IMG/VR virus record: IMGVR_UViG_3300033233_000001
Coordinates: 124,001 to 188,000 of that record
Strand: one strand, 5' to 3'
DNA length: 64,000 nt
Shown here one piece after another: positions 46,288 to 61,390 of the stretch (its first letter is position 1; every line of letters begins with the position of its first letter). The notes under the pieces are model-generated. The model saw nothing but the letters and a program-made list of their open reading frames with translations, searched no databases and was not told the origin of the DNA. The position numbers and the translations under genes were made by a program.

Positions 46288-47805
46288 TCATTCGGCCGCC
46301 TGCGCCTTCTCCGTGCGGGCCTTCTTTCGGATTCGACCGGACGCGCGCTTGATCGCTGCGATCTGATCCGGCAGCGGCAGCGGCTTACCGTCCCGCAGGA
46401 GCATGTTCCACGCGTAGATGACGTCGACGGGACGCTCTAGCCTGCACGTCACGACCTCACAGCAGAACTTGCCGCTCTTGCCGAAGGTCGCGCTGACCTC
46501 GGCCGAGTGCTCGTGCAGGCACGACGGACACGTCCGCGAGTTCATGTCGCTCGGCACGATCTCGACCGTCAGCCCCCGCTTCTTCGCCGCCCACTCGATG
46601 GACTCTCGCAGCTGCGCGAGCGGGAAGCTCCGCACGAGGTACTCGACGTGTTCGCCAAGCTCGGGAGCGCCATCCTTCGCTGGATTGCCCCAGTCTTCGA
46701 CGAGGATCCGCGACACGCCGCGCCTTTCGGCGAGGCGCATCGCGTGCGACGCGATCTCCTGGCACTTCGTGCGTACCCACCTGGCCTCCGCGTCTTCGAG
46801 TCGCGTGAAGTGCTCTTCGCGCCGAGCAGTGCCGTGACCCTTGGCACCGTCACCAAGCTCGCGCTTGTGCCGACCGAGTGACGAGCGCCGCGCACGGTAC
46901 GCCGCCTTGTGGGCGAGCACGTCGCCGCCGTCGGCGAGCACAGTCGTGTACGCTTCACGCCCGTCGTCGCCGCGGGCGATTGCCGCGGTCAGGAACGTCC
47001 GCACGCCTCGATGCAGAGCCATCGTGCGGCCGGTCTCGGTCTTACGGACCTCGGAAGTGAAAGACACGAAGGCCATCCACTTCCGTTTGCCATCGCGATC
47101 GTCGTCTTCGACCAGGCGGCAGTCGCCGAGGCAGGCCGGATCGGCCAGAACACGCTTCAGCGACGCGAAGCCGCTTCCGCCGTAGGGCTTCACGACCAAG
47201 CGCACCTGTGTCGGCCGGTCGCTGTCCTCGCCGAACAACGGCAGCGTCAAGATCGCCAGGCCGTCGCTCGGTTCGAGACGGATCGCGCCGTTGCCTGACG
47301 CGATGTAGATCGGAGAGCCACCCCTGAAGGTGGGAAGCGACATCTTGCCCTTCCATTTTTCCTTCCGCCACTTCTTCCAGCGCGTGAAGGCCGCACCGGC
47401 CGTACCAAGCAGGACTTTCGCGCCGGGGTACGTCGTCGCGACCTTCTCGTCGCCGTAGTACGGCTTGCCCTTCTTGACGCGTGCGGCCGCGGCCTCGCGT
47501 TCGTTGAGCCAGAGGTCACGCGTCAGCTGGTAACTCCGCGACCGCGCTAGGATCTTTCCGGCCTTCTTTGCGCCGAGCTTGCCGGCGCGCTCCTCGACTT
47601 CGAGATCGGTGATCACGCCGTTGAGGACGCGATGGATCGGAGCGCGCAGCGCGCGCAGGAGCGGCCCGAGTGCCGCCCAGTCGTGGTCGAGCGGGCGGAT
47701 CACCTCCAACCGCAGGGTCGAGACGATCTGCGCATCGACCGCCGCATCGTCTAACGCGGCCTCGACGACGAGCGGCCCCGTCTCTTCTTCAGCGGGCTCA
47801 GTCAC
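46288..47805 (-). CDS. cas12f: Cas12f1-like effector, predicted nuclease-dead (about 505 aa)
   Basis: Colinear with AsCas12f1 as recalled (LEVIRPLDHDW, GKMSLPTF, DGGD..GHG, ILVED, CPSC/CCEV Zn ribbon); RuvC-I reads MALHRG in place of MGIDLG. Confidence 0.85.
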   Translation of the reverse strand: MTEPAEEETGPLVVEAALDDAAVDAQIVSTLRLEVIRPLDHDWAALGPLLRALRAPIHRVLNGVITDLEVEERAGKLGAKKAGKILARSRSYQLTRDLWLNEREAAAARVKKGKPYYGDEKVATTYPGAKVLLGTAGAAFTRWKKWRKEKWKGKMSLPTFRGGSPIYIASGNGAIRLEPSDGLAILTLPLFGEDSDRPTQVRLVVKPYGGSGFASLKRVLADPACLGDCRLVEDDDRDGKRKWMAFVSFTSEVRKTETGRTMALHRGVRTFLTAAIARGDDGREAYTTVLADGGDVLAHKAAYRARRSSLGRHKRELGDGAKGHGTARREEHFTRLEDAEARWVRTKCQEIASHAMRLAERRGVSRILVEDWGNPAKDGAPELGEHVEYLVRSFPLAQLRESIEWAAKKRGLTVEIVPSDMNSRTCPSCLHEHSAEVSATFGKSGKFCCEVVTCRLERPVDVIYAWNMLLRDGKPLPLPDQIAAIKRASGRIRKKARTEKAQAAE

Positions 47806-48422
47806 GCTGCATCTCGACGTGACGTGCGCTTCTGTGCCTCGACGGCCGACGGGCTCGTCTCCGAGCCGGCGGCGCGCTTCGGCGTCTTCCGCAGCTGCCT
47901 GATCTCGGCACGCAGCGTGGCGTTCTCGACGCGCAGACGGTCGCACTCTTCCTTGGCCGCGACGAGTTCACTCGCGAGCGCCGTGTAACTCTTGTGACCC
48001 GCGCCCGCTCCGAGAATTCGAGAGCGCAGATCGCTCGCGAGACGACTCACGGTCTGAGCCGAGATCGGCGTCCCGTTCGTACGCTCCCACGTCCGCGCCT
48101 CGTCGAGCATCTCGCGCTGCTTGCCGGCGTCGCGGAAGCGACCGGCGGCCACAACCGCATGAATTCCCACGCCTTCGATGCCCTTCGCGCCCAGACCGTT
48201 ACGCGCTGCCCTGTACCCGTCGTATCGCGACGGGCGGCACAGGTTCGTCTGCTCCAGGAACTGGAGGAACGTGAGGCCCGTGTCCTTCCACAGGCCGGTC
48301 ACCTGTTCCGCCTCGTAGAGATACGAGAGGAAGTCGCCCTCTGCATCGTCCGCCAGCGTTCGGAGACGCTTGGCCTCGGCGATGAACTGTTCGAGCGTCG
48401 TCGACTTGTTGATTCGCGGCAT
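47802..48422 (-). CDS. 206-aa protein translationally coupled to cas12f
   Basis: GTGA overlap with the cas12f start; C-terminal coiled coil. Confidence 0.75.
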   Translation of the reverse strand: MPRINKSTTLEQFIAEAKRLRTLADDAEGDFLSYLYEAEQVTGLWKDTGLTFLQFLEQTNLCRPSRYDGYRAARNGLGAKGIEGVGIHAVVAAGRFRDAGKQREMLDEARTWERTNGTPISAQTVSRLASDLRSRILGAGAGHKSYTALASELVAAKEECDRLRVENATLRAEIRQLRKTPKRAAGSETSPSAVEAQKRTSRRDAA

Positions 48423-48812: not shown

Positions 48813-49059
48813 TTCTTGTCGGACGTCATCGGCCGTCCCAGCCCTCGCGACGAGCGCGCTCCAACAGGTCGACGCGCTCGGGTCCGACCGCTGCGTGCTG
48901 CCACATCTGGACGTGGGCCTCCTCGACGTCGACGAGACGCACGATCTCGGCGTCCTCGCCGGCAAGCTGGACGAAGCCGGCCTCCGGGCGCCAAATCCAG
49001 ATCGGCCCGCAGAGTACGTTGCCGGACTTTAGCTTGATGGTGGCGTCACGCATTGGGCA

Positions 49060-49131
49060 TTCGGGGGCCAGGACTCGAACCTGGACGGGCGACTTCAAGG
49101 GACGCTGGCCTGCCGATTAGCCGAACCCCGA
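49060..49131 (-). tRNA. tRNA-Gln(TTG), atypical loop
   Basis: Cloverleaf; loop CCTTGAA. Confidence 0.7.
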
Positions 49132-49515
49132 GCAGCATTCAGGCGCTGGCTCGTTGGCGTTCGGTCTTCGCCTTCCGTCTCTCGGCCGAGCGCGCCTTGC
49201 GTTCCACAGCAAGCCGTATGCGCTCTATGCAAACCGAACACGAGTCGGACGAGAAGTCCAAGTGGACGCCGTACTCGCAGCCGTCGCTACACGCCCAGTC
49301 GTCTTCGACGTAGGGGCGCGCCTGCTCGTGCCGCATGCTCAGCATGGCAGCGGCAGGATCGAAGCCTGCCCTACGCGCTAGCGCCGCAAGCCCTTCAAGC
49401 GAGACCGCGAGGTCGCCGAGATCGTCGACGGTCACCGAGCACGTCACGCCCCGACGACGACCACTGCCATCTACGGCGTGGTTCACGTGCGGAGGCCGAT
49501 CTTCGTCCTTGGCCG

Positions 49516-49848
49516 TCATGCGGCGCTCTCCCGCGTCCGCTCGGCACGCTCGGCCTTCTCCGCCAACTCCGCATCGAAAAGCCGGCGTGCGCGTCGGCAC
49601 ACCTTGCACGCGTCCGGCGAGCAGCAGAGTTCGATCTTGTAGCCGTCCTCGCACCACTCGGTGATGTAGTTATGCTCGATCCACACGTCGCTCGGCTTGA
49701 AGCCAGCACGTTTCGCGAGCGCGGAGAGATCTGCGAGCGACCAGCCGTTCGCGCCGTCGCTGATGATGACGCAGCACTTGCCGGCGATCCAGCCGGTCCG
49801 CTTCGGCATGTCATGGACGACAACTACGGTCTTTTCAGTCTTGGCCAT
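49516..49848 (-). CDS. hypothetical protein
   Basis: MAKTEKTVVVV start; similar layout to the neighbouring ORF 49139-49519. Confidence 0.5.
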   Translation of the reverse strand: MAKTEKTVVVVHDMPKRTGWIAGKCCVIISDGANGWSLADLSALAKRAGFKPSDVWIEHNYITEWCEDGYKIELCCSPDACKVCRRARRLFDAELAEKAERAERTRESAA

Positions 49849-49850
49849 TA

Positions 49851-49921
49851 TACCCCGTACGGGAGTCGAACCCGTCTCGTCTGCGTGAAAAACAGATGGC
49901 CTCCCAGAAGCCGAACGGGGC
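49851..49921 (-). tRNA. tRNA-Glu(TTC)
   Basis: Cloverleaf. Confidence 0.8.
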
Positions 49922-49925
49922 AAAA

Positions 49926-50008
49926 GTTCCTGACAAGGGGTGCCGGCGGAAATGGGCTTGCGCCCAGTTTGTTTGGTAAACGGTAACCGCGTAGCGTCGG
50001 CCAGGAAC
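49926..50008 (-). ncRNA. Y-RNA-like element
   Basis: GCCGA..GGTTACC..CCTTGTC within a closed terminal stem. Confidence 0.7.
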
Positions 50009-50079
50009 CGGGAAAGAATACACAGGCCGAGGTCTTGCGACGAACCTCATCGAGCACGGCCTGTGGGGGAGTGATTGAA

Positions 50080-50169
50080 GTCGAGCAAGGGGAGTGACCT
50101 CGGGATCGGTGCGTGCCGGGTTAAATGCCCGGTGCGATTGAGGTGATAACCCGTGATCGTCGGCTCGAC
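50080..50169 (-). ncRNA. Y-RNA-like element
   Basis: GCCGA..GGTTATC..CCTTGC within a closed terminal stem. Confidence 0.72.
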
Positions 50170-50209
50170 TGTTGGTTTTGGTGAGACCCTTTCTAGCTGA
50201 TTGAAACTC

Positions 50210-50266
50210 CGAGCAAGGTGGTGTCCGACGGGTTTCAACCAAAGATAACCATCGGACTTCGGCTCG
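50210..50266 (-). ncRNA. Y-RNA-like element
   Basis: GCCGAAG..GGTTATC..CCTTGC immediately after the Ro60 stop. Confidence 0.72.
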
Positions 50267-50274
50267 AAGCAGAA

Positions 50275-51999
50275 CTAGTCGCGGATGAAGTCGGCGATGA
50301 CGGCCGGCGCCGCTGCGTCGAAGCCTACCACGTCGATCATGCCGGCGTCGGTCGGATCTGCGATCGTGAACTCCGACGCGTCGGTCGCGACCACGATGAG
50401 CTTGGACGCGATGCCCATGTTCTCGCGGTACTGCTTGAGCGCCACGTGCGGATGCACGGCGCCGGCCCACGTCTCGTTGTCCGTCGCGACGTAGAACGCC
50501 TCGACCTTCTGCTTCTGCGCGAGCGCGTGGAGCATCGGCAGCGCGCAGTCGGTGCCGCCCATGGGAACGGCCTCCATGGCCTTGATGACGTCGGGCAGCG
50601 TCGTCTTCGCCGTGATGTTGACCGGGAGCAGACGCGAGGGCTGGCCGCCCCAGCGTCCGCCGTAGCCAGCCGCGTGACCGGCCGAGCCGCTCGCGAAGCC
50701 CACGATGTCGTAGTCCGACTCGCGCCGCGCCGTGACCATCGCCATGCAGCCGACGGCCTCGCGTGCCGTGAGCGTCGTGCCCGCGATGAAGCTCGACGCC
50801 ATCGAACCTGACACGTCGAGCGCGAGCATGATGGACTTGCCGGTGGGCTCGACAGTCTCGAACGCCAGGTAGAACGCGTCGTCGAGGGCGTCGATGATGG
50901 ACTGCACCGGCGACCACGTCAGCTTGCCCTTCTCGCCGTGGCCGGCTGCGTACGTCTTGAGCGCGAGGAGCACTGCGATCGGATGCAGCCGCGACTTCTT
51001 GATGGCGTCGGCGTTCTTCAGCTGCTTCACGACGAGCTTCGATGCGTCCGAGCCAGGAACGAGCAGGCCGTTCGCCGTCATGCGCCCGAGGTTGCGCACG
51101 CAAGCGTGCATCGGCATGCGCTGGAGCAGCGCATCCCATACAACCGCGTGCTTCTGGTGCTCTGACGGCACCATCTCGTGAGTGAGCCCGTACTCACGGA
51201 TGATCGTGGCCGCCTCGTTCGCGTCCTTCGCAGCGCGCACCTTCTCGACGCCCTCGATCAGCGCCGGCAGGGCTCCGGCGGCGACCGCCTCGTACGAGAC
51301 GCCCGCCTCCTGCTGCTTGCGCTTGACGGAGCGCTCCCCGAGGCCGTCGCGTCCCGCGATGGTCCAGCGCAGGATGGACGAGACGATCGGATCCGTCGTC
51401 TTCGGGTGCGCCTGCCGAAGCAGGTCGCGGTGCGAGCGTCCGCCGCGCTGCTGGTACTTCAGCAGCTGGTAGGCGAGGTCTCGCCCCTCCTTGCTCGTGT
51501 ACCACGCGCCGACCGCGCGGCGCAGGCCCGAGCCCCAGCCGCGAAGCTGCTCGACCTGAGCGACGAACTCGAAGAGGTGCGTGCCGGTCCGGCACACGCG
51601 TGGCAGCGCGGCAAGCGCGAGGCGCCGCACAACCGCGTCCTCGTGGGCAGCGGCGACGGCGAGCGCGAAGATCGCCGCATCGTTCTTCGGCGCGCGACCC
51701 GACTCGCTGAGCGCAGCGATGTGCTCGACAGCGGCCGCAGCGTCGTCCTTGAGGCAGCGGCCGAGCGCGGTCGCGTTCTCCTTGACGAGCTTCTTCTCGC
51801 CGACGTGGAACGTCCCGCCCTCGGCGCCGAGGATCAGAAAACGGTCCAGCCGCTTCCAGTCGTCCACTTCAAACGTGAAGCCACCGGCCGCGTTCTTGAC
51901 CTGACGCACGTCGGCCTTCGCCGACTGCGGCGCGTCCTCGCGCGCAGCGGACACGGACTTCTTCTTCGACGCACCGAGGTGCGCGGCGTAGTTGGACAT
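50275..51999 (-). CDS. rsr: Ro60/Rsr TROVE-vWA RNA-binding protein
   Basis: NAAGGF..RFLILG, KYQQRGG..HRD, DVSGSM, GGTDCALPM, TDNETW and GFD. Confidence 0.95.
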   Translation of the reverse strand: MSNYAAHLGASKKKSVSAAREDAPQSAKADVRQVKNAAGGFTFEVDDWKRLDRFLILGAEGGTFHVGEKKLVKENATALGRCLKDDAAAAVEHIAALSESGRAPKNDAAIFALAVAAAHEDAVVRRLALAALPRVCRTGTHLFEFVAQVEQLRGWGSGLRRAVGAWYTSKEGRDLAYQLLKYQQRGGRSHRDLLRQAHPKTTDPIVSSILRWTIAGRDGLGERSVKRKQQEAGVSYEAVAAGALPALIEGVEKVRAAKDANEAATIIREYGLTHEMVPSEHQKHAVVWDALLQRMPMHACVRNLGRMTANGLLVPGSDASKLVVKQLKNADAIKKSRLHPIAVLLALKTYAAGHGEKGKLTWSPVQSIIDALDDAFYLAFETVEPTGKSIMLALDVSGSMASSFIAGTTLTAREAVGCMAMVTARRESDYDIVGFASGSAGHAAGYGGRWGGQPSRLLPVNITAKTTLPDVIKAMEAVPMGGTDCALPMLHALAQKQKVEAFYVATDNETWAGAVHPHVALKQYRENMGIASKLIVVATDASEFTIADPTDAGMIDVVGFDAAAPAVIADFIRD

Positions 52000-52037
52000 G
52001 ACGAATCTCCCAGAGACAAGAGCCCAGAGAATCAGAG

Positions 52038-52112
52038 CGTCCCATGGGGGACTCGAACCCCCGTTGCCGACGTGAGAGGCCGGCGTCCTTTGGCCATCTA
52101 GACGAATGGGAC
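52038..52112 (-). tRNA. tRNA-Glu(CTC)
   Basis: Cloverleaf. Confidence 0.88.
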
Positions 52113-52409
52113 AGGGAACTGTACAGGAACCGAAGACGAGATCAGGCCGCGACTTCTTCACCCGCGCGCGCCGGGGGCTTCGCTTCGACCTTCGGCGCGC
52201 ACTCCTTGCACACGAGCTTTTCCTTGGCGACCTCGTGTCCGAACCGCGTGTTCATCGGCCGGTCGAGGTGGTCGCGCTCGTACATGGCCACGCGGTACGA
52301 CGAGACGACGCGGACTGGGCGCGGGTCGAGCACGGTGCCGTTACGCATCGAGCCGTCGAACGCGATCCGGCAGACCTCACAGCGATAGCTCATCGGAATC
52401 ACCTTTTTC

Positions 52410-52492
52410 TGGAGAGCGGAGGACTCGAACCCCACAGCCGAAGCTGCTAACCGGTCTTCAAAGCCGGGCCGCGCCTTGCGACTTCGCCCTCC
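52410..52492 (-). tRNA. tRNA-Ser(TGA)
   Basis: Long variable arm. Confidence 0.72.
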
Positions 52493-52758
52493 GGATACGA
52501 CACACTGACATGCTGCGAAACGCTGTGCAAGCACAAACACTGCCCCCCCCCCGCAATAGACCAAGCCGCTCCGTCGCTCGCGCCGACTCGGCTAAAGGAG
52601 GCCCCAGATACGACCACCGATCTCCCAGCCGATCCGCAAGACGCATCCGCAGACCAACATGCCGAGCGTCCAGAGCAGGAAGCCGGCCGGCGTTTTCATG
52701 TCTGGCATCGCAGGTATCCTTTCGTGGCGTGACTAGGGGCTGACCAGGGACAGGAGAC

Positions 52759-52840
52759 AGGAAGGAGGAAGAGTCGAACTTCTGCGCCGAAACGCCGCGG
52801 GTTTTCGAGGCCCGTCCCACGCCGTGTGGGTTCACCTTCC
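52759..52840 (-). tRNA. tRNA-Ser(CGA)
   Basis: Long variable arm. Confidence 0.75.
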
Positions 52841-52844
52841 AGAA

Positions 52845-52932
52845 CGGAGAGAGGTGGTATCGAGCCACTGCGCCGAAGCGCCACGCGGTATTCCAAACCG
52901 GCCCGAGACCTTCTCGGTTCACCCTGCTCTCC
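52845..52932 (-). tRNA. tRNA-Ser(GGA), 5' end altered by insertion
   Basis: Anticodon GGA; the 5' strand GGAGAGCAG is supplied by the element end. Confidence 0.65.
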
Positions 52933-54223
52933 AAAATGTGATCGAACGTGTTCGTTCGGTCACGACTTGGCTCCTGCTTCCGCCACGACACTTGCTCGAC
53001 GCTGAGGCCGTCGAGTAGAGGCAGCCGTGTCCACAGGCGTAGCCTTGCGGCTGTTCCCCGAAAGCCTCGGGTACGCTTCCAAATTCAACGCGGCGTTGCG
53101 GTCTCGGTCCAGGACCAGACCGCATGCCTCGCACTCGTACGTCCTCGTGCCCAGCGACAACTCGGCCTTCACGACTCCGCAGCCGCTGCACGTCTTACTC
53201 GACGGGAACCACCGGTCAGCCACGATCACCTCGCAGCCGTAGACAGGTCCCTTCTGTATCAGCAGCGTCCTGAACATCCCCATCCCGACATCCGAGAGCG
53301 CACGCGCCAGCGAATGGTTTCTGAGCATCCCTGCCACGTTCATGCCCTCGATGACCGCCGCTTGGGTTTCACGCGCGATCTTCGTGGTCGTCTTGTGCAG
53401 GAAATCCTTCCGGATGTTCGCGACGTCTCGGTGAATCTTCGCCAGTTCCTCACGAGCCTTACGCCTGTTCGCGCTTCCCTCCTGTCTACGATGGAGCTTC
53501 CTGTTCGCACGCCGCAGCTTCTTCAACGCCTTCCGAAGCGGCTTCGGCGCGTCTAGGGGCTCTCCTCGTGACGGCACGACCGCAGTCTTGAGGCCCAGGT
53601 CGATGCCGAGGATCTCGTGCTCCGGGACGTTCGGCACCCGGAAGTCGCCCTCGACCTGAACCGACAGATACCAACGGTCGGCGATGCGCTTCACGCGACC
53701 GCCGAGGATCTTGCCGTGCAGCCTGAGCGGCTCGCGCGTCTTCACGCTGCCGATGACCGGGAGGTGAACGTGCTTGCCATCGGCAAGGAAATGGAATTTG
53801 TCGTTCGCGACGTAGAAGGCGTCACGGGTCTTGCCCTTCTTCTTGAAGTTCGGTGGTCCGACGCGTGGGCCCTGGCGCTTTCCCGTGATGCTCTTGATGT
53901 AGTTCGAGAACGCCGTGTCCAGGTCGGAGAACGCGCCGGCATTCGCGTCTCGCGGCGACTCGAAGATCCAGGGGAACGCTTCGCCCTTGATGGCGTTGAA
54001 CTGCTTCTTGAGCTTGGTCCCGCTGGGCTTCTGGCCGGCCCTGTACTGGCGGTTCCACTCGTGAAGTGCCCAGTTGTACGTGAAGCGCGCGACACCGCAT
54101 GCACGCAGCATCGCCTGGCGCTGCCGTACTGTCGGGTCGAGAGCTATGACGTGTCCGTGGATCATGTGATCGTGCGTCTGTAGTTTGTCCGTAAATGTCC
54201 GCGAAGACAAGAGCTAGCTATGG
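52924..54223 (-). mobile_element. non-autonomous IS607-like TnpB element
   Basis: Removing it rejoins GGAG|GGTGAACC, the tRNA 5' end; CGATCACAT occurs near both ends; no tnpA. Confidence 0.65.
52960..54165 (-). CDS. tnpB: TnpB RNA-guided endonuclease (intact D-E-D)
   Basis: N-terminal HTH, GIDLGLK, IEGM, CSGC/CEAC and DRDRNAALNL. Confidence 0.93.
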   Translation of the reverse strand: MIHGHVIALDPTVRQRQAMLRACGVARFTYNWALHEWNRQYRAGQKPSGTKLKKQFNAIKGEAFPWIFESPRDANAGAFSDLDTAFSNYIKSITGKRQGPRVGPPNFKKKGKTRDAFYVANDKFHFLADGKHVHLPVIGSVKTREPLRLHGKILGGRVKRIADRWYLSVQVEGDFRVPNVPEHEILGIDLGLKTAVVPSRGEPLDAPKPLRKALKKLRRANRKLHRRQEGSANRRKAREELAKIHRDVANIRKDFLHKTTTKIARETQAAVIEGMNVAGMLRNHSLARALSDVGMGMFRTLLIQKGPVYGCEVIVADRWFPSSKTCSGCGVVKAELSLGTRTYECEACGLVLDRDRNAALNLEAYPRLSGNSRKATPVDTAASTRRPQRRASVVAEAGAKS

Positions 54224-54474
54224 CTCCTACCAGAACCAGCCAGCGTCGCGCTTCGGCGGCACGATGCGCTCGTACCGTGCGATGCGGATGAGATGCGCGA
54301 CACGCGCCCGGTAGCGCTGGTTCAACCAGCGACGATACCATGAGGGCGAGCCGTCCGGGAACCGTCCGTTCTTGCCGACGCTATTGTGATGGAACGTCCG
54401 AGCCATGGTCCTCCAGGCTCGGGGCGATAGGCCCCGGGCACTAGAAGACCGCGCCTTTTCGATCACAGCGCACG

Positions 54475-54774
54475 TCAGCGTCGCCGATCGTCTCGGCGCT
54501 CGTAGCCGCCGCCGCCGCCAGGCCGCGGCTTGTCCTGCGCCTCGTTCACGTTGATCGTGCGCCCGTCCAGCGTCGAGTTGTTCATGCCCTTGATGGCGGC
54601 CTCCATCTCAGCCGGCGTGTTGTACGACACGAAGCCGAAGCCGCGCGAACGGCCGGTCTCTCGGTCGGTGATGACCTTGGCCTCGGTGACCTTGCCGAAG
54701 GGCGCGAACGCCTCCATCAGCCCCTCGTCATCGATCGACCACGGCAGGTTACCTACGAACAGCTTCTTCGCCAT
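54475..54774 (-). CDS. RRM RNA-binding protein
   Basis: RNP2 LFVGNL, RNP1 RGFGFVSY and a Gly-rich tail. Confidence 0.93.
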   Translation of the reverse strand: MAKKLFVGNLPWSIDDEGLMEAFAPFGKVTEAKVITDRETGRSRGFGFVSYNTPAEMEAAIKGMNNSTLDGRTINVNEAQDKPRPGGGGGYERRDDRRR

Positions 54775-55533
54775 CGCTCTCTCCTCAGCTAGAACAGATC
54801 ACTCATCACTCATCGGTCTCCGGCACAGGCTCGATCAGCCCAGCCTTCTCCGCTTCTTCTCTTAGCACGCCCATCGCGCAATGACACGGACCCGGATACC
54901 AACCGCCGGCACTGTACCCGGTGTCGTTGCACAAGGGACACTCGGTTGTCGAACGGTTCGGTGGCTCGTACGAGTCTGCCACGTTCTCCGCGGCGGCGTC
55001 GATCGCGTCGGCAGTCACGCGACCGGCCTCGCTCATCTTGTCGGTTGCGATGCGCACGGCGTTCGCAAGCGCTTCGAGTGCGCGCACTACGGCACGTCGA
55101 CCGCCAAGTAGCTTTCGTGCGCGCATCAGCATCGTCGTGCCCTGCTAGTAGTATCGGTTGTACGAGCACTCGGAACGGTGCCCTCGCGGCCGCATGCAGA
55201 AATCCGCACCGAGACGAGAACGCAAAAGCGGCTTGCCGCACGGCGGCTCTTCGTGACGGCTCGACCCGTCAAACCGCGACAGGCTCGGCTCGCCGATCAG
55301 TTGCGTCGGCACCGCAAGACCAAGCCGCTTCGCGGTTGCCTCACCGCGCTTTGGGCTGACCCGCCAGAGCACGAGGAGCGCTCGCGTCCGGGCGTCAGCC
55401 GCCTCATACCAAGCAGAGTGCAAGCAAAGCGGAGTGCCGCGCCTACGAGGAGGCTCAGGCGGAACGAGCGCGTGCAGCCGTGCGACCTCGGCCTGGAGAT
55501 CGACGACACGTAGTGCGCCGCGGAGCTTGCGCT

Positions 55534-55806
55534 TCATGTCTCGCGCCAGCCTTCGAGGTCGTCGATCCAGATCGGCGTCCCAGGCCCAACCCAGCCGCCG
55601 CCGATATTGAAATCGAAATACTCGTTCGCCTCCTCGTAGGTCATCCCATCACGCGTCATCAGGATGTCGAGGATCTTCTTCGTCGAGTACGCAGCCAGCG
55701 TCGGCTGACCACACCGTCGCGCGAAGCCGATGAACGCGTCGTCGAGGCCGTCAGCCGTCAGGGCATCTGGGTTCTCGTCGGCGAGTAGCTCGCGCCAAAA
55801 GATCAT
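55534..55806 (-). CDS. conserved hypothetical phage protein
   Basis: ADGLDDAFIG..EEANEYFDFNI..TP. Confidence 0.7.
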   Translation of the reverse strand: MIFWRELLADENPDALTADGLDDAFIGFARRCGQPTLAAYSTKKILDILMTRDGMTYEEANEYFDFNIGGGWVGPGTPIWIDDLEGWRET

Positions 55807-56882
55807 CGTGAGGCCTCACGTTTGTGGAAGAACCACCTTCCGAGCAGGCGTGTTTGGTGCTCCGCCTGAGCACGCGCCGCCTCAGTAAAGATCGGCGCGT
55901 CCTCTACCTGCTTCGCCAAGTGCAACATTTCCGGCTGACGGTCGAGGAACGGCATCCACTCGACCGCGATGCCGCACTGCCAACAGAACCGATCGAGCCC
56001 CCGCAGTAGCTCGTCGCGCGACATGCTCGACCAAAGACCGTGGTCCAAGCGCAAGCGCGGGAGCGGCTCCGGAAGCGACCGCGCTTGCAGCCATGCACCG
56101 CAGGAGCCGCAGCAGATTGCCAGGCCGGTCGGATCGCCACCGACCCTAGGCCCGTCGAGCATCGGCCAGCACCAGGTTCCCGGCGAGTCACTCATCGCGA
56201 GAACTCCCGCAGACGAACGACCTCATGGAGCAGCGCGCGGACGAACATCGCGTGCCGCGAGCGGTCGATCTTCTTGTCGTTCTGGACGTACTCGTGGACG
56301 ATCTCCATCGCGGCGTACCACTCCGGACTCGTCGCCCCAGCGCGGAGATATCCTGGATCGGACTCCGCGAGCTTTAGCCACGAGCGGATCGAGGTAAGCA
56401 TCTCGTCAGTCAGCGACTCGCCCTGTGCAGCGGTGATGAGCTTCCGCTCGCTAGCCTCCTCACCGGTTTTCGTTCGCTCCGGACCGGTGACCGGATCTAC
56501 CGCGCGCCCGAGCCCGCGGTTCGCCCACCACCACGTCCAATGATCTTCGGTACGGTCGACGATGGTCTGCAAGCTCTCGGTTGCCACGGCGCACACAGCA
56601 TGCATCCGCTTCGCCCACTCGCGCAAAGCCTCTGGAGTCTTCAGCTGGTCGAGTTCGTCGTAGAGCGAACACGTCGGGAGATGGTTGTCCTCCCAGAGCC
56701 CGCACTGGATGCAGCGATCGACGCTCACGCCGAAGCCCTCTTCGAGACGACGACCGTGCGCACGTACGGGCCGTCCCCTGGCACGCGTACGATCGTCGTT
56801 ACCTTGACGCCTCCGCACTTGACGCAGACGCGCGTCCTGTCCTTCTGGACATTCCAGCGCTTCCACTTGTGCTTGCAGGCGC

Positions 56883-57395
56883 TCACGCCGCCACCAGGTA
56901 CGGCCGCCAGGTTTCCGGCACCGTGCTCATGTCGAAGCGCTTGCTGACGATCGGCAGCCACTCGGGCTTCCGAGGTGCACGCCTGAGTGGCATCTTGGCC
57001 TCTGCCGGCGTCCGGTCACCCTTCTTGGCGTTGCAGACGTAGCAGGCCATCACGATGTTGTCCCACTCGGTCCGGCCGCCACGCGATCGCGGCAGCACAT
57101 GATCGTAGTTGAGAGCGCGAGGCTCGAAGACATGATGACAGTACCCGCACTCGTTCCCGTCGCGGAGAAGTACGTTCTGACGCGAGAACTTGATCGAGAC
57201 CTTCCGCGTCCTCGACTTCTTCACCTTCCTGATGACGGAAGGCATTTTCATCGAGACCGAAGGCGAGCGCAGCACCTCGTCGAATTCCTCGATCACCTCG
57301 ACCTTGTTGTCGTAGATGAGGCAGACCGCGCGCTGCCAGTCGACGATGCGCTCAGGTCTGTAGAACATGTCCAGTACCAGTACTCGGGTCTCCAT
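56883..57395 (-). CDS. HNH endonuclease
   Basis: RDGNECGYC..DHVLPRSRGG..NIVMACYVCNAKK. Confidence 0.9.
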   Translation of the reverse strand: METRVLVLDMFYRPERIVDWQRAVCLIYDNKVEVIEEFDEVLRSPSVSMKMPSVIRKVKKSRTRKVSIKFSRQNVLLRDGNECGYCHHVFEPRALNYDHVLPRSRGGRTEWDNIVMACYVCNAKKGDRTPAEAKMPLRRAPRKPEWLPIVSKRFDMSTVPETWRPYLVAA

Positions 57396-57414
57396 GACGA
57401 ACCTCGTTCAGTTG

Positions 57415-57487
57415 TGCGGACCGTGGGAGTCGAACCCACACTTTTCGGTATTTGAAGCCGATGCCTCTGCCGTTGGGCTACGTCCGC
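57415..57487 (-). tRNA. tRNA-Leu(CAA), short variable arm
   Basis: Cloverleaf; loop TTCAAAT. Confidence 0.78.
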
Positions 57488-58194
57488 AGGGTTACTTCTT
57501 CTCGCTCTCGTCCTTCTTCTCCTTCCATCCGATACGTCTTGTCACCGACCTTGATCTCGGTGTCACCGATCTCGACCGTCAGCGTCGTCTTGTACGTCGG
57601 ATTGTACCGCGGATCTGCGTCGACGCCGTTCTTCTCGGCCTCGTCGTCCGCTTCTTTCATCAGCGCGAGGAAGAGGCGCATCCAGGCGATCTCGGCGTCG
57701 CAGAAGCGCTCGGTCACGCGCAGACGACGAGAACCAGCGCCGACCTCCTTCCAGAGCTTCACGTCGCCGTCGAGCACGTTGGCTTGCTGCCCCGAGACCT
57801 TCACGAGCCGCGCCGCCGATGCCGCACGCACGAGAGACGGCAGCCTCGACCAGTCCTCGATGAAGCGTGATGCGGCCTCAGCGAGTGTCGGGCCGGCGTT
57901 CGTGCCGTTTCGCAGGATCGCGATCTCCGACGCGCCGAGCGACAGCGCCTCGCGTGCCGCCGCTTCTAGCATCTCGACGGTTTCGGCCGACGACCCCGAG
58001 CCCGACGACCCCGAGCCCGGCACGCTCAGCGTGCCGAAACGCGTCGTGACGTGTGCGCTCCACGAGTCCGGTGCGGTCGCGATCAGCGTGATCTGCACGC
58101 CGATGCCTCGACGTCCGCCCTCGTAGATGCCTTTGCTCTTGCGTGCACACTCGATGCCCAGGAACGTGATGCTAGTCTTCGTCTCGTCGGCCAT
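57478..58194 (-). CDS. hypothetical protein
   Basis: MADETKTS start with GGAGGG ribosome-binding site. Confidence 0.55.
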   Translation of the reverse strand: MADETKTSITFLGIECARKSKGIYEGGRRGIGVQITLIATAPDSWSAHVTTRFGTLSVPGSGSSGSGSSAETVEMLEAAAREALSLGASEIAILRNGTNAGPTLAEAASRFIEDWSRLPSLVRAASAARLVKVSGQQANVLDGDVKLWKEVGAGSRRLRVTERFCDAEIAWMRLFLALMKEADDEAEKNGVDADPRYNPTYKTTLTVEIGDTEIKVGDKTYRMEGEEGREREEVTLRT

Positions 58195-58272
58195 GGTGAA
58201 CCCTCCGGGGCGGAGAGTATGTCGTAAGCGGCTTCGGAGCAAGCGCGAACGGCATGTGGTAGCATCCAGCCC

Positions 58273-58938
58273 ATGCCCACGTACTCGATGAGCCCAAGCC
58301 GTCTCGGTTACACCTGCGACTCCGGCGACGATCCGGTGCACGACCGGATCACCGGCGACTGCTACGACAACGCCTGCGAGGCCGAAGCGGCTGGCGCCCG
58401 CCTCTGGGACTACGGGTGCGCAGAGCCGGTCGCGGAGCCGGCGTACGCCTGGGGACCAAGCGGCTGGTGGGGCGGCGACGGTGGCTGGTGGGGCGGAAAC
58501 GGTGGCAGCGCGTTTCCGTGGCGTCGTCGCGGTCGACGGCACGGCGGCGGCGGAGTTCCACGCGCTGGTGGTCCGCGCGGCGGCGGCCGGCTGCGCCTGC
58601 CTAGCCCTGGACAGCCGGGCATCACGATGCCGCCGGTCGGCACGCCGGGAACGCATCCGAACGTCTCGTTCCATCCATCGCCGCGGATGACCGCGCCGAC
58701 GACGACGACTCGCATGCAGATCTCGCCAGCTGGCAGCGGAGCCCGAACGATGCCGTCGCGCGGCGGCGCCGCACGCATGGCCAGCCCGACCAGCCGCGGC
58801 ATGCGCGGACTCGGACAGGACACCGCGACGGTCGACACGAGATGGAAGTACGCCGCTCTCGGACTCGGCGCGCTCGTGATCGTGCAAGCGTGGTGGTGGA
58901 ATAAGAAGGCCCCGAACGTCTTGAAGCTCGGCTACTAA
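58273..58938 (+). CDS. Kazal-like, Gly-rich protein with a C-terminal TM
   Basis: C..DPV..G..Y.N.C.A..AG..GC pattern. Confidence 0.5.
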   Translation: MPTYSMSPSRLGYTCDSGDDPVHDRITGDCYDNACEAEAAGARLWDYGCAEPVAEPAYAWGPSGWWGGDGGWWGGNGGSAFPWRRRGRRHGGGGVPRAGGPRGGGRLRLPSPGQPGITMPPVGTPGTHPNVSFHPSPRMTAPTTTTRMQISPAGSGARTMPSRGGAARMASPTSRGMRGLGQDTATVDTRWKYAALGLGALVIVQAWWWNKKAPNVLKLGY

Positions 58939-58939
58939 C

Positions 58940-59023
58940 TGGGGTCGACAGGAGTTGCACCTGCACGTCCTTTCGGACACACGGCCCTCAACCGTGCTCG
59001 TCTGCTCGTTCCGACACGACCCC
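58940..59023 (-). tRNA. tRNA-Leu(GAG)
   Basis: Cloverleaf with variable arm. Confidence 0.8.
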
Positions 59024-59027
59024 AAAG

Positions 59028-59110
59028 TGCGGAAAAAGGGAGTCGAACCCCCACGGGCTTTCGCCCACACCGGCCTGAACGGTGCGCGTCTTCCATTCCG
59101 CCATTCCCGC
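59028..59110 (-). tRNA. tRNA-Leu(CAG)
   Basis: Cloverleaf with variable arm. Confidence 0.85.
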
Positions 59111-59118
59111 TTATGTGA

Positions 59119-59190
59119 TGCACGGTAAGGGATTTGAACCCCTGTAAACCTGCGTGTAAAACAGGCGCCTCGCCTCTCGGCCAACCGTGC
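59119..59190 (-). tRNA. tRNA-Val(TAC)
   Basis: Cloverleaf. Confidence 0.85.
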
Positions 59191-59310
59191 AGTTGCTCGT
59201 CAGGGTCCGGCGGCGACAGTCCTAGGTGCCTTACCCGGTTTTACGGGAGAGAGCTAGGGCTGGCATCCGCTAATCGTCTGACGAGCGCCCCCGGCGCGAG
59301 CCGTGAGCCA

Positions 59311-59382
59311 TCGGGGTAGCCGGGATTGCACCGGCGATCTCTCCGCCCCGAACGGAGCGCGATACTACTTCGCCATACCCCG
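59311..59382 (-). tRNA. tRNA-Pro(CGG)
   Basis: Cloverleaf. Confidence 0.85.
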
Positions 59383-59546
59383 AGAAAGCTCTCGCGTCGT
59401 CGAGCCCTGCCTCGCCGCCTTGCTTAGAGGCGTTTGTCGCATTCGTGCATCCGGTGATCAGGTCGGCTTGCACGAACGTCTATGCGTCGCTCTCGGACTC
59501 GACAAACGTCGCGGGCTTTTCAGGCTTGCGCGACGCTGACGCGAGA

Positions 59547-59616
59547 TCGCTACGGTCGGAATCGAACCGACGTACAAGCCCGTATGAGAGGCTGCCCTGA
59601 CCATCAGGACGTAGCG
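59547..59616 (-). tRNA. tRNA with CAT anticodon (Met/Ile2)
   Basis: Cloverleaf. Confidence 0.75.
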
Positions 59617-59620
59617 TTGG

Positions 59621-59692
59621 GAGCGAGGGCCGGAGTCGCACCGGCGTTCTTCGGCTTATGAGGCCGACGGATTACTGCTTTCCCACCTCGCA
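59621..59692 (-). tRNA. tRNA-Met(CAT)
   Basis: Cloverleaf with a 1:72 mismatch. Confidence 0.75.
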
Positions 59693-59697
59693 CAAGA

Positions 59698-59766
59698 TTG
59701 CGGTCGCCGGAACTGCCCACGGTCCTAAGCGTTATGAGCGCTTTGTGCACTGTACACCACCCCGCA
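59698..59766 (-). tRNA. tRNA-Met(CAT)-like, degenerate T arm
   Basis: Clear anticodon arm, poor T loop. Confidence 0.55.
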
Positions 59767-59838
59767 CGTTCCCACGGTGAGTTGAACACCGATTCCTAGC
59801 TTCGGAGGCTAGTGCCCTTCCATTTGGACGATGGGAAC
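59767..59838 (-). tRNA. tRNA-Arg(CCG)
   Basis: Cloverleaf. Confidence 0.82.
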
Positions 59839-59847
59839 AGATCGTAT

Positions 59848-59919
59848 CGCTCTCGGACTGAATCGAACAGTCGTTCCTGGTTTCGTAGACCAGTGCCCTA
59901 TCCGCTGGACGACGAGAGC
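59848..59919 (-). tRNA. tRNA-Arg(ACG)
   Basis: Cloverleaf. Confidence 0.85.
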
Positions 59920-59924
59920 ATCAG

Positions 59925-59999
59925 CACCCCTGGCGGGACTCGAACCCGCGGCCTCTCCGTCCGTAGCGGAGCACTCTGATTCCACTGAGCTACAGGGGC
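59925..59999 (-). tRNA. tRNA-Arg(ACG)
   Basis: Cloverleaf. Confidence 0.88.
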
Positions 60000-60000
60000 A

Positions 60001-60074
60001 CGCTGCGGACAGGAGTCGAACCTGCAACCTCTCGTTTAGAAAACGAGCGCCGCTTCCGGTGCGGCTTCCGCAGC
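60001..60074 (-). tRNA. tRNA-Arg(TCT)
   Basis: Cloverleaf. Confidence 0.82.
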
Positions 60075-60076
60075 AT

Positions 60077-60206
60077 TTCTGGCAAGGGATGCAGACCGGC
60101 GTTTAGCGTTCTAACCGTTTAAACTACCGCCGCCTTTCGGCCGCGACCGGGAGTCGAACCCGGACCTCTCGAATACAAGTCGATAACCGCTCTGCTTCGG
60201 CCAGAA
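60077..60206 (-). ncRNA. yrlA: YrlA-type Y RNA
   Basis: GCCGAAG..GGTTATC, then T arm, closed acceptor stem and D arm, then CCTTGCC. Confidence 0.82.
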
Positions 60207-60207
60207 G

Positions 60208-60276
60208 AGGCGCGAGCCAGGGTCGCACTGGCCTTCATCGGGTTGCAGCCGATGTCCTTCGCTGGAAGATCGCGCC
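60208..60276 (-). tRNA. tRNA-Cys(GCA)
   Basis: Cloverleaf with U73. Confidence 0.78.
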
Positions 60277-60280
60277 TAAC

Positions 60281-60318
60281 TCTCGGGCAAGGGGCGTCGT
60301 CGGAGATTCGGCCCGAGA
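60281..60318 (-). ncRNA. minimal Ro60-binding-stem hairpin
   Basis: TCTCGGGCCGAA..CCTTGCCCGAGA. Confidence 0.5.
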
Positions 60319-60390
60319 AGCGACAGGCGAGACTCGAACTCGCGTAGACCTGAATGGAAGTCAGGCGCCTTACCTCTAGGCTACTGTCGC
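60319..60390 (-). tRNA. tRNA-Gly(TCC)
   Basis: Cloverleaf. Confidence 0.85.
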
Positions 60391-60393
60391 GGA

Positions 60394-60465
60394 AGCCGCC
60401 ATCGAGATTCGCACTCGACTAGCCCGCATACCAAGCGGGTACCTCGCTATCTAGGATTTGGCGGC
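60394..60465 (-). tRNA. tRNA-Thr(GGT)
   Basis: Cloverleaf. Confidence 0.78.
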
Positions 60466-61044: not shown

Positions 61045-61091
61045 CCGATCACCATGAACCGTGCGGAGATTCTCGTCAACCGTTTATTTGA

Positions 61092-61163
61092 AGCCACCGG
61101 AGGTGCTCGCATCCTCCTCGCCGGTCTACAAGTCCGGCACGTCGCTTTCTACGCTTCGGTGGC
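61092..61163 (-). tRNA. tRNA-Thr(TGT)
   Basis: Cloverleaf, atypical T arm. Confidence 0.68.
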
Positions 61164-61173
61164 ACTACGAAAA

Positions 61174-61245
61174 AGCTCGCAGTCGAACTCGAATCGACCT
61201 TTCCGACTTACGAGGCCGGCGCGTCGCCATCTACGCTTTGCGAGC
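61174..61245 (-). tRNA. tRNA-Thr(CGT)
   Basis: Cloverleaf. Confidence 0.82.
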
Positions 61246-61251
61246 CAATAC

Positions 61252-61325
61252 TGGACCTGACCGGCTCCGCCCCGGTCGCCTCCTGAGTGCAAGTCAGGCG
61301 CTCTCCTAAAATGAGCTACAGGCCC
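61252..61325 (-). tRNA. tRNA-Ala(TGC)
   Basis: G3:U70; atypical T loop. Confidence 0.78.
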
Positions 61326-61390
61326 TTGGAGCCGGACCGTCAGAGGCGTTTGTCCCGTCCCTGGGCGCGTGACGGTGGGATTCCGGCGTA

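What the first reader, a model, noticed from the sequence alone, without database searches (positions are those of the whole stretch)
49926..51999. Phage Ro60 with a family of about five Y-RNA-like elements
Seen: three tandem RNAs follow rsr directly and share GCCGA..GGTTA(T/C)C..CCTTG(T)C with different inserts and no tRNA module. A full YrlA-type RNA (60077-60206) and a 38-nt stem-only version (60281-60318) lie in the tRNA array. Known: Rsr-Y RNA complexes act in RNA decay and repair. Inference: a modular set of adaptors or decoys linking one Ro60 to different partners.
Basis: partly seen in the sequence, partly recalled or inferred. Interest (0 to 1): 0.68.

Follow-up and report, generated by a model that had tools for sequence, protein, structure and literature searches.

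The report
Viral Ro60 gene with five Y RNAs
A 298-kb virus contig encodes a Ro60 RNA-binding ring protein plus four intact Y RNAs and one deleted copy; the kind of system is known, but the short RNAs look unusually like animal Y RNAs and lie among the virus's tRNA genes.

Summary
Window 50275-51999 (-) encodes a full Ro60 (TROVE + vWA_Ro60). Five minus-strand elements carry the canonical Ro60-binding helix NNNGC(C)GA/UUGCNNN: Y1 50207-50269, Y2 50079-50170, Y3 49927-50007, Y4 60077-60206 and Y5 60281-60318.

A covariance model built from short elements of 14 contigs finds exactly these five in the 64-kb window. Across 26 elements from eight related contigs, 94% of model pairs are standard, against 35-44% in slid controls.

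Y1-Y4 share CCGA-N8-GGUUAYC, the layout of the Rfam nematode sbRNA and vertebrate Y RNA consensus. Y1 passes the sbRNA gathering score. Y4 adds a tRNA-like T and D arm (YrlA architecture) but scores far below Rfam's YrlA threshold. Y5 is an internal-deletion remnant of a second YrlA-type gene that is intact in a relative.

Y3, Y4 and Y5 abut tRNA genes, so tRNA-processing enzymes probably cut their ends. The same RNA type occurs at many viral and bacterial Ro60 loci.

No RNA data exist, so expression, Ro60 binding and the adaptor idea remain untested. Verdict: real Y RNAs, a new variant of a known kind.

The parts
50275..51999 (-). rsr / Ro60 gene (574 aa): TROVE ring plus vWA domain with an intact MIDAS motif (DVSGS...T...D)
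   Evidence: Pfam TROVE 163.2 bits and vWA_Ro60 193.5 bits. phrog_850 RNA-binding protein, 9.3e-82. Full-length match to human Ro60 9nen (2.5e-122), Xenopus 1yvp (3.6e-120) and D. radiodurans Rsr 2nvo (4.9e-102).
50207..50269 (-). Y1: short Y RNA. Lower stem with bulged C, 9-bp upper stem, GGUUAUC, small loop. It starts a few nt after the rsr stop codon.
   Evidence: R1 68 bits. Rfam RF01656 (nematode sbRNA, a Y RNA homologue) 39.3 bits, above the gathering score of 38. Fold -21.1 kcal/mol, z -2.1. Orthologues in L003-L009.
50079..50170 (-). Y2: short Y RNA with the same stems and GGGUUAUC. Its apical module holds a conserved 5-bp hairpin, CCGGG-loop-CCCGG.
   Evidence: R1 42.2 bits, E 1.5e-7, and not in the training set. 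RF01656 24.3 bits. The hairpin columns are invariant in 5 relatives, with a U:A compensatory change in L006.
50021..50065 (-). Conserved hairpin between Y2 and Y3, followed by a U-rich run. It has no Ro60-binding motif. Role unknown: possibly a terminator, a processing signal or a further small RNA.
   Evidence: Fold -23 kcal/mol, z -2.6. The core sequence is conserved and the outer stem covaries in L005. No Rfam match.
49927..50007 (-). Y3: short Y RNA (GGUUACC variant). Its apical module has an A/U/C-rich single strand and a GCAA-tetraloop hairpin. It ends 2-4 nt before tRNA-Glu(UUC).
   Evidence: R1 23.9 bits, E 0.0027. Orthologues in 6 relatives show GNRA/UUCG tetraloop swaps and a covarying stem. 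All of them abut a tRNA 5' end.
49850..49922 (-). tRNA-Glu(UUC) directly after Y3. Its RNase P site would define the Y3 3' end (inferred).
   Evidence: ARAGORN and Rfam tRNA 46.9 bits. The same junction is present in L003-L006.
52037..52112 (-). tRNA-Glu(CUC) directly upstream of rsr. It places rsr inside the minus-strand tRNA island.
   Evidence: ARAGORN. The same gene order is found in L003-L006, L008 and L009.
60077..60206 (-). Y4: YrlA-type Y RNA. It has the same Ro60-binding helix, upper stem and GGUUAUC, plus a tRNA-like module (T arm, GAAA-capped acceptor-like stem, D arm). It is wedged between tRNA-Cys and tRNA-Arg(UCU).
   Evidence: R1 26.2 bits. Rfam YrlA 22.6 bits, below the gathering score of 69. 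T-loop and D-arm columns are invariant among 12 such elements. Fold -52.9 kcal/mol, z -2.6.
60281..60318 (-). Y5: 38-nt hairpin holding only the lower stem and Ro60-binding helix. It is the deletion remnant of a second YrlA-type gene, between tRNA-Gly(UCC) and tRNA-Cys.
   Evidence: R1 26.7 bits. Both flanks align to the ends of the full 137-nt element L003:2900-3036, with about 97 nt missing. The sequence is confirmed by a second assembly.
60000..60390 (-). tRNA frame of the upstream pair: tRNA-Gly(UCC) 60319-60390, Y5, tRNA-Cys 60207-60276, Y4, tRNA-Arg(UCU) 60000-60075, with 0-4 nt spacers.
   Evidence: ARAGORN. The same order, with one or two full YrlA-type elements, is found in L003, L008 and L009.

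Best explanation
The locus is a Ro60-Y RNA ribonucleoprotein system carried by a large virus.

Shown:
- One Ro60 ring protein is encoded together with four intact Y RNAs and one decayed copy, all on the minus strand inside a tRNA island of 34 tRNA genes.
- All five RNAs keep the helix that Ro60 proteins recognise: paired 5' and 3' ends, a bulged C, then G-U and A-U pairs.
- Y1-Y4 add a 9-bp upper stem closed by GG/CC and the loop motif UUAYC, at the spacing seen in the animal Y RNA and sbRNA consensus.
- Above that shared base each RNA has its own apical module: a plain loop (Y1), a CCGGG hairpin (Y2), an A/U/C-rich strand plus a GNRA hairpin (Y3), or a tRNA-like T arm, D arm and acceptor-like stem (Y4).

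Inferred:
- The RNAs are made as parts of long transcripts together with rsr and the tRNAs.
- RNase P and the tRNA 3' processing enzymes cut Y3, Y4 and Y5 free, because these abut tRNA genes within 0-4 nt. Y1 and Y2 are trimmed back to the stem that bound Ro60 protects.
- Each RNA docks on the outer face of Ro60 through the shared helix and so gates the ring.
- The different apical modules bring in different partners, for example host PNPase or tRNA-handling enzymes. This would aim the complex at structured RNAs, most plausibly tRNAs damaged or misfolded during infection, alongside the virus's two RNA ligases.
For: - Ro60 identity.
- Shared motif far above chance.
- The model finds only these five elements in the window. 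Nothing further was found elsewhere in the genome.
- Covariation: 94.2% of cells paired against 35-44% when slid; 118 double-change cells against 15-29; 13 of 19 pairs have compensatory changes; the C:G, G-U and A-U core is invariant.
- Conserved order in relatives whose Ro60 is 57-79% identical: rsr, then 2-4 short Y RNAs, then a tRNA.
- Type-specific conservation of the apical modules.
- Rfam Y-family matches: RF01656 at 39.3 bits for Y1; RF00019 at 30.8 bits for a relative's element.
- tRNA-like module of Y4.
- The same RNA type lies beside Ro60 on the same strand in 122 of 122 descriptor hits at 57 of 80 bacterial loci, and at many viral loci.
- RNA-repair context: RtcB with an intein and a second RNA ligase.
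- No PNPase-type RNase PH domain in the virus, so any nuclease partner would be the host's.
- Literature: Y RNAs tether Ro60 to PNPase and gate its cavity; several Y RNAs per species; a Thermus phage Ro60 binds two Y-like RNAs and host PNPase (PMC4201824, PMC12135203, 10.1101/312249).
Against: - There is no expression or binding evidence. The only public run holding this DNA is the probable source DNA sample.
- No sigma-70-like promoter was found within 49000-52600, so the transcription units are inferred.
- The structural alignment used for the pair counts was fitted to the model, which favours the structure.
- Y4 fails Rfam's YrlA threshold, and Y3-Y5 score only 24-27 bits with R1.
- The partner-specific role of the apical modules is pure inference. 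The modules could matter only for folding or stability.
- The viral nature of the record was not independently confirmed by structural genes.
Confidence: 0.72

Rival explanations
1. Redundant gates. The several Y RNAs are interchangeable copies that only raise the dose of a Ro60 lid and stabiliser. Their different inserts are tolerated variation, not partner-binding sites.
For: The Ro60-binding base is the only part shared by all five. The two YrlA-type paralogues are lost in turn in different relatives: the window keeps b, L008 and L009 keep a, and L003 keeps both. This suggests redundancy. Copy number varies from 2 to 6 among loci.
Against: Each short type keeps its own module across relatives whose Ro60 has diverged to 61-79% identity. 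Hairpin columns are invariant and stems change in a compensatory way. That argues for selection on the modules themselves.
Confidence: 0.15
2. Cis-acting mRNA elements. Y1-Y3 act mainly as the structured 3' untranslated region of the rsr mRNA. Ro60 binds them to stabilise or feed back on its own message, and they are not released as free RNAs.
For: Y1 starts a few nt after the rsr stop codon, and no promoter-like site lies between rsr and the elements. In the bacterial loci the short element lies 100-200 nt upstream of Ro60 on the same strand.
Against: The same element type also occurs 8 kb away inside the tRNA array (Y4, Y5), and before or after Ro60 in different genomes. Position relative to the coding sequence is therefore not conserved. 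In M. smegmatis, Y RNAs are processed out of a precursor shared with rsr (PMC4201824).
Confidence: 0.07
3. Decoys against the host. The RNAs, especially the tRNA-like Y4, soak up host factors such as a host Rsr, anticodon nucleases or other tRNA-targeting defences, rather than serving the viral Ro60.
For: They lie inside a tRNA island, next to RNA-repair genes of the kind that jumbo-phage surveys link to RNase attack (PMC7824862). Y4 has a tRNA-like module.
Against: The strict linkage with a Ro60 gene on the same strand in viruses and bacteria, and the invariant Ro60-binding helix, point to the cognate Ro60 as the primary partner. The short Y RNAs have no tRNA mimicry.
Confidence: 0.05
4. Non-functional leftovers: decayed tRNA or Y genes, or repeat elements with no present role.
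For: Y5 clearly is a deletion remnant. There are no expression data.
Against: For Y1-Y4 there are strong compensatory changes, conserved position, and a conserved motif at fixed spacing: 8 nt in 97 of 122 bacterial hits.
Confidence: 0.02

Closest known systems
Bacterial and phage YrlA Y RNAs with Rsr (Chen et al. 2014, PMC4201824; Rfam RF02553)
   Same: A Ro60 orthologue with Y RNAs on the same strand. Y4 has the 5' GNCGAA(N)G motif (GCCGAAG), a T arm, an acceptor-like stem and a D arm in YrlA order. At least one tRNA-like Y RNA is kept per genome, and more than one Y RNA per locus.
   Different: Y4 scores 22.6 bits against the gathering score of 69 and lies 8 kb from rsr, outside the 4-kb criterion. 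Both strands of the Ro60-binding helix are kept, whereas in the Salmonella and M. smegmatis RNAs only the 5' strand is recognisable. GGUUAUC follows the upper stem and is absent from the Rfam YrlA consensus. Y1-Y3 have no tRNA-like module at all.
Metazoan Y RNAs and nematode stem-bulge RNAs (Rfam RF00019, RF01656; Kowalski and Krude 2015, PMC4726728)
   Same: A lower stem with a bulged C and the CCGA/UUG core, a 9-bp upper stem, the UUAUC loop motif at the same 8-nt spacing, and a variable loop. Y1 passes the RF01656 gathering score. A relative's element aligns to the RF00019 consensus at 30.8 bits. The viral Ro60 matches human Ro60 better than it matches D. radiodurans Rsr.
   Different: No RF00019 match in the window itself. 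No GUG-CAC upper-stem motif. No Pol III-type oligo-U end. The RNAs are encoded next to Ro60 and tRNAs in a virus, and the DNA-replication role described for animal Y RNAs has no basis here.
Deinococcus radiodurans Yrn1/Yrn2 and the Ro60-Y RNA-PNPase machine (RYPER)
   Same: A metazoan-like Ro60-binding helix with both strands kept, several Y RNAs beside rsr, and a model in which the Y RNA both gates Ro60 and tethers it to an effector.
   Different: Only a weak RF01053 match (16.2 bits). The virus has no PNPase-type domain of its own. The Deinococcus Y RNAs lie upstream of rsr, whereas Y1-Y3 lie downstream.
Thermus phage phiLo Ro60 with Yrl1/Yrl2 (PMC12135203)
   Same: A phage-encoded Ro60 with more than one adjacent Y-like RNA. 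Host PNPase was shown to join that complex.
   Different: phiLo Ro60 is too distant to appear among the solved-structure matches at E<=0.001. phiLo has two RNAs upstream of the gene. Here there are three downstream plus two inside a tRNA array.

Membership tests
Ro60 / TROVE protein (Rsr) | TROVE domain above Pfam's curated cut-off | tested here: met
   PF05731 163.2 bits against a cut-off of 23.
Ro60 / TROVE protein (Rsr) | C-terminal vWA domain with a MIDAS motif (DxSxS, T, D) | tested here: met
   PF25045 193.5 bits. DVSGS, GGTDC and TDNET align with the human and Xenopus Ro60 motifs.
Ro60 / TROVE protein (Rsr) | Full-length similarity to solved Ro60 rings | tested here: met
   9nen 2.5e-122, 1yvp 3.6e-120 and 2nvo 4.9e-102, over residues about 25-573. 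The structure itself was not modelled.
Y RNA (metazoan type / sbRNA; Rfam RF00019, RF01656) | 5' and 3' ends pair into a lower stem that holds the conserved bulged helix (CCGA / UUG with a bulged C) | tested here: met
   Present in all five elements. The C:G, G-U and A-U pairs are invariant in 25-26 of 26 related elements.
Y RNA (metazoan type / sbRNA; Rfam RF00019, RF01656) | Upper stem followed by the loop motif UUAUC | tested here: met
   Y1, Y2 and Y4 have GGUUAUC and Y3 has GGUUACC, each 8 nt after CCGA. The upper stem covaries. Y5 lacks both.
Y RNA (metazoan type / sbRNA; Rfam RF00019, RF01656) | Score at or above the Rfam gathering threshold | tested here: inconclusive
   RF01656: Y1 39.3 bits against 38 (met), Y2 24.3 bits (not met). 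RF00019: no match in the window at E<=10, and 30.8 bits against 38 for a relative's element.
Y RNA (any type) | Bound and stabilised by the cognate Ro60 in cells | not testable with these tools
   No RNA run holds this DNA, and no RNA-protein prediction tool was on hand.
YrlA (Rfam RF02553; Chen et al. 2014) | Rfam gathering score of 69 bits | tested here: not met
   Y4 scores 22.6 bits, E 0.011 in a 271-nt search.
YrlA (Rfam RF02553; Chen et al. 2014) | tRNA-like module: T arm, acceptor-like stem and D arm between the two strands of the Ro60-binding stem | tested here: met
   Y4 has CCGGGUUCGACUCCCGG, a GAAA-capped stem and a D arm. The T-loop and D-arm columns are invariant among 12 such elements. 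Y1-Y3 and Y5 lack the module.
YrlA (Rfam RF02553; Chen et al. 2014) | Encoded within 4 kb of Ro60 on the same strand (the search criterion of Chen et al. 2014) | tested here: not met
   The strand is the same, but Y4 lies 8.1 kb upstream of the rsr start, inside the tRNA array.

The most novel reading that the evidence does not exclude
The short elements belong to a large family of animal-type Y RNAs that neither Rfam nor the papers I could read describe. The family has a bulged lower stem, a 9-bp upper stem and UUAUC at fixed spacing. It travels with an animal-like Ro60 through viruses and bacteria (Verrucomicrobiota, Myxococcota and others), usually inside tRNA arrays. If these RNAs are homologous to animal Y RNAs rather than convergent, the Ro60-Y RNA pair moved between cells and viruses as one unit. 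The UUAUC/upper-stem module, so far tied to DNA replication in animals, would then be an ancient Ro60-linked feature. This contradicts the published view that bacterial Y RNAs are not homologous to the vertebrate ones.
Probability: 0.3. Interest if true: 0.78.

Novelty: new variant of a known kind. Interest (0 to 1): 0.55.

Why it matters
Ro60-Y RNA particles are known in animals, some bacteria and a few phages. Outside Deinococcus and Salmonella, however, their RNA partners are poorly catalogued, and homology searches have so far found only the tRNA-like YrlA class.

This locus and its relatives show a second, compact class that keeps the hallmarks of animal Y RNAs. It occurs in tandem sets of two to six and sits among tRNA genes and RNA ligases.

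That gives a concrete set of natural variants with the same Ro60-binding base and different apical modules. They can be used to test whether Y RNAs really work as exchangeable adaptors. It also points to tRNA quality control or repair during infection as the likely task.

In addition, it offers a covariance model that finds such RNAs at many Ro60 loci where none are annotated.

Tried and rejected
- **Close relatives by DNA or protein.** A near-identity DNA search of the phage collection found nothing. A single-protein scan of viral contigs also found nothing. Relatives came instead from the word-based protein search and its contigs.
- **Loose stem descriptor.** A bare CCGA...TTG descriptor gave 166 mostly chance hits in the genome, so I tightened it. 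The collection-wide pattern scan was also largely chance: most of the 118 stretches had no stem and no Ro60.
- **Alignment method.** A plain MAFFT alignment with RNAalifold gave a shifted structure. I replaced it with a manual structure and a model-based alignment.
- **Expression.** It could not be tested: the only run listed is a DNA run that may be the source sample. Laying its contigs only confirmed the assembly.
- **Promoters.** The sigma-70 scan found none near the locus.
- **Viral hallmark genes.** Four Pfam families (capsid, two terminase domains, sheath) and PHROG scans of 29 large reading frames gave no structural gene. The viral label is therefore not independently confirmed.
- **Literature.** Two reviews on bacterial Y RNAs (PMC10870794, PMC6047535) are not held. 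I cannot exclude that this short class is described there.
- **Not used.** I ran no structure prediction and no complex prediction. The protein is clearly Ro60, and the complex tool does not take RNA.
Full report
**Where the window lies.** The window is bases 124001-188000 of a 297,749-bp IMG/VR virus record (65% G+C, CheckV completeness 90%). The 15 kb from 49000 to 64000 is a minus-strand tRNA island. ARAGORN tRNAs there. Rfam adds one more at 62056-62126, and I found a further, intron-split tRNA-Asn. HNH endonuclease and TnpB-like genes are interspersed.

**The protein.** Window 50275-51999 (-) encodes 574 aa with Pfam TROVE (163 bits) and vWA_Ro60 (193.5 bits) and PHROG 850, 'RNA-binding protein'.
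- It aligns end to end with human Ro60 (9nen, 2.5e-122), Xenopus Ro60 (1yvp, 3.6e-120) and D. radiodurans Rsr (2nvo, 4.9e-102).
- The MIDAS residues are kept. There is an 18-residue insert in the vWA domain.
- Known phage Ro proteins are at most 45% identical.
- The nearest sequences are metagenomic, at 57-79% identity on virus-like contigs. Next come Verrucomicrobiota and Myxococcota proteins at 50-54%.

**The RNA elements.** On the minus strand, three elements follow the rsr stop codon, and two lie 8 kb upstream between tRNA genes.
- All five pair their ends into a stem that finishes with C:G, a bulged C, G-U and A-U (5' NNNGC(C)GA, 3' UUGCNNN). By comparison with the Rfam Y_RNA and sbRNA consensus and the literature (PMC4201824), this is the Ro60-binding helix.
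- Y1-Y4 continue with a 9-bp upper stem closed by GG/CC and the motif UUAYC. The string GCCGA-N8-GGTTAYC occurs four times in the window, against 0.00 expected from shuffles.
- Each element folds with its ends paired.
- My descriptor found no further copy in the whole record. The genome-wide model search also found nothing outside the window.

**Relatives and covariation.** Seven contigs carrying the closest Ro60 proteins keep the same order: tRNA-Glu(CUC), rsr, two to four short Y elements, then a tRNA. Where the contig is long enough, one or two tRNA-like Y elements sit between tRNA-Gly(UCC), tRNA-Cys and tRNA-Arg(UCU).
- I built covariance model R1 from 20 short elements of 14 contigs, with a hand-set structure.
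- At E<=10 it finds exactly the five elements in the window.
- On the model-based alignment of 26 elements from the window and seven relatives, 94.2% of cells form standard pairs, against 35-44% when the 3' partners are slid.
- There are 118 cells with changes on both sides, against 15-29 in the slid controls. Thirteen of 19 pairs show compensatory changes.
- This alignment is fitted to the model, which favours the structure. The margin over the slid controls is nevertheless large.
- In one relative (L008) every element has U:A where the others have G:C next to the core, giving the vertebrate-type GGUCCGA/CUUGAUC.

**Resemblance to animal Y RNAs.**
- Rfam's nematode stem-bulge RNA family (a Y RNA homologue; PMC4726728) matches Y1 at 39.3 bits, above its gathering score of 38. 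It matches Y2 at 24.3 bits.
- The vertebrate Y_RNA model aligns to a relative's element at 30.8 bits. That alignment shows the same lower stem, spacing and GGGUUAY.
- No Y_RNA match was reported in the window itself.
- The UUAUC motif is described as conserved in sbRNAs and vertebrate Y RNAs. The same review describes bacterial Y RNAs as highly divergent from the vertebrate ones and not homologous to them (PMC4726728).
- The Rfam YrlA consensus has no UUAUC at this place.

**Y4 and Y5.**
- Y4 has a perfect T arm, a GAAA-capped stem and a D arm, arranged as in YrlA. These columns are invariant in 12 such elements from viral contigs.
- Y4 nevertheless scores only 22.6 bits with Rfam YrlA (gathering score 69) and lies outside the 4-kb window used by Chen et al. 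2014. It works like a YrlA but is not a member by the curated test.
- Y5 aligns on both sides with the ends of the full 137-nt element at the same position in L003. About 97 nt are missing, covering the 5' strand of the upper stem, GGUUACC and the tRNA-like module.
- It is therefore a deletion remnant that still forms a perfect Ro60-type stem.
- The short form is also present in a second assembly.
- Relatives keep one or the other of the two YrlA-type genes, or both.

**Apical modules.** The short types are orthologous across relatives and keep their own features.
- Y2 keeps a CCGGG-loop-CCCGG hairpin, with a compensatory U:A in one relative.
- Y3 keeps a hairpin whose tetraloop swaps between GNRA and UUCG while its stem covaries.
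- This favours selection on the modules and so fits the adaptor idea. It does not show what binds them.

**Processing (inferred).**
- Y3 ends 1-4 nt before a tRNA in seven of seven genomes.
- Y4 and Y5 are separated from their flanking tRNAs by 0-4 nt.
- RNase P and the tRNA 3' end enzymes would therefore release them.
- No sigma-70-like promoter lies in 49000-52600, which is consistent with long transcripts.

**Wider occurrence.**
- R1 finds two to six elements beside Ro60 on many viral contigs, and two beside the Ro gene of mycobacteriophage ET08, where none is annotated.
- In 80 bacterial Ro60 loci it gives 112 matches, all on the Ro60 strand.
- My descriptor gives 122 hits in 57 of those loci, again all on the Ro60 strand. 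The 8-nt spacing holds in 97 of them.
- These bacterial loci are also rich in tRNA genes.
- The window is thus one case of a widespread arrangement that is not in Rfam. I could not read two key reviews, so the novelty claim is guarded.

**Functional context.**
- The record encodes an RtcB ligase interrupted by an intein and a second RNA ligase.
- It has no PNPase-type domain and no CCA-adding enzyme.
- Together with the tRNA island, this points to RNA surveillance or repair during infection, using host nucleases, as shown in vitro for Thermus phage phiLo (PMC12135203).

**Limits.**
- Expression and binding are untested.
- I found no capsid, terminase or sheath gene, so 'phage' rests on the IMG/VR label and on auxiliary genes.

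Noticed in passing
window 62975-63258 (-), intron about 63013-63223: A tRNA-Asn(GUU) gene is split in its anticodon loop by a group I intron-like insert of about 211 nt. The Rfam group I intron match is 36.4 bits, below the gathering score of 50. The two exon halves align to the intron-less tRNA-Asn that a relative has at the same place in the array (L008:4405-4478). ARAGORN does not call this gene.
   Followed up: partly
window 50021-50065 (-): A conserved hairpin with a U-rich tail lies between Y2 and Y3. Its core sequence is kept and its outer stem covaries in L005:4700-4750. It has no Ro60 motif and no Rfam match.
   Followed up: partly
G000:C1:113858-116569 (+), outside the window (L214:1228-3939): The RtcB RNA ligase is a 903-aa reading frame whose RtcB match is interrupted by a Hint plus LAGLIDADG segment. 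This is very probably an intein.
   Followed up: partly
window 12085-13116 (-): A second RNA ligase (phrog_968, 1.1e-36). The genome therefore carries two ligases besides Ro60.
   Followed up: no
window 52960-54210 (-) and 46288-47946 (-): TnpB / IS605 OrfB-like genes flank the rsr block. The first is clear and the second is weak. In relatives a release-factor-like gene (PCRF/RF-1 domains) lies upstream of rsr. No RF-1 domain was found anywhere in this genome.
   Followed up: partly
window 62056-62126 (-) and 52760-52840 (-): Rfam calls a tRNA at 62056-62126 (51.6 bits) that ARAGORN misses. A weak tRNA-Sec-like match (35.9 bits, below the gathering score of 47) lies at 52760-52840.
   Followed up: no
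L134-L213 (bacterial Ro60 loci), e.g. L157 and L181: Ro60 genes of Verrucomicrobiota and other bacteria also sit inside dense same-strand tRNA arrays. ARAGORN tRNAs in 536 kb of flanks, and 12-14 tRNAs in 7.6 kb on contigs of 0.6-1 Mb. The Ro60-Y RNA-tRNA array linkage is therefore not confined to viruses.
   Followed up: partly
L131:3560-3632 and 3836-3905 (Mycobacterium phage ET08): Model R1 finds two Y-like elements just upstream of the Ro gene gp220. The second overlaps the annotated hypothetical gene gp219, which may therefore be a miscall.
   Followed up: no
whole record G000: No capsid (PF05065), terminase (PF03237, PF17289) or sheath (PF04984) match was found, and no structural PHROG among 29 large reading frames. 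Helicases and a nicotinamide phosphoribosyl transferase are present. The structural genes are either very divergent or lie in the missing part of the genome.
   Followed up: partly
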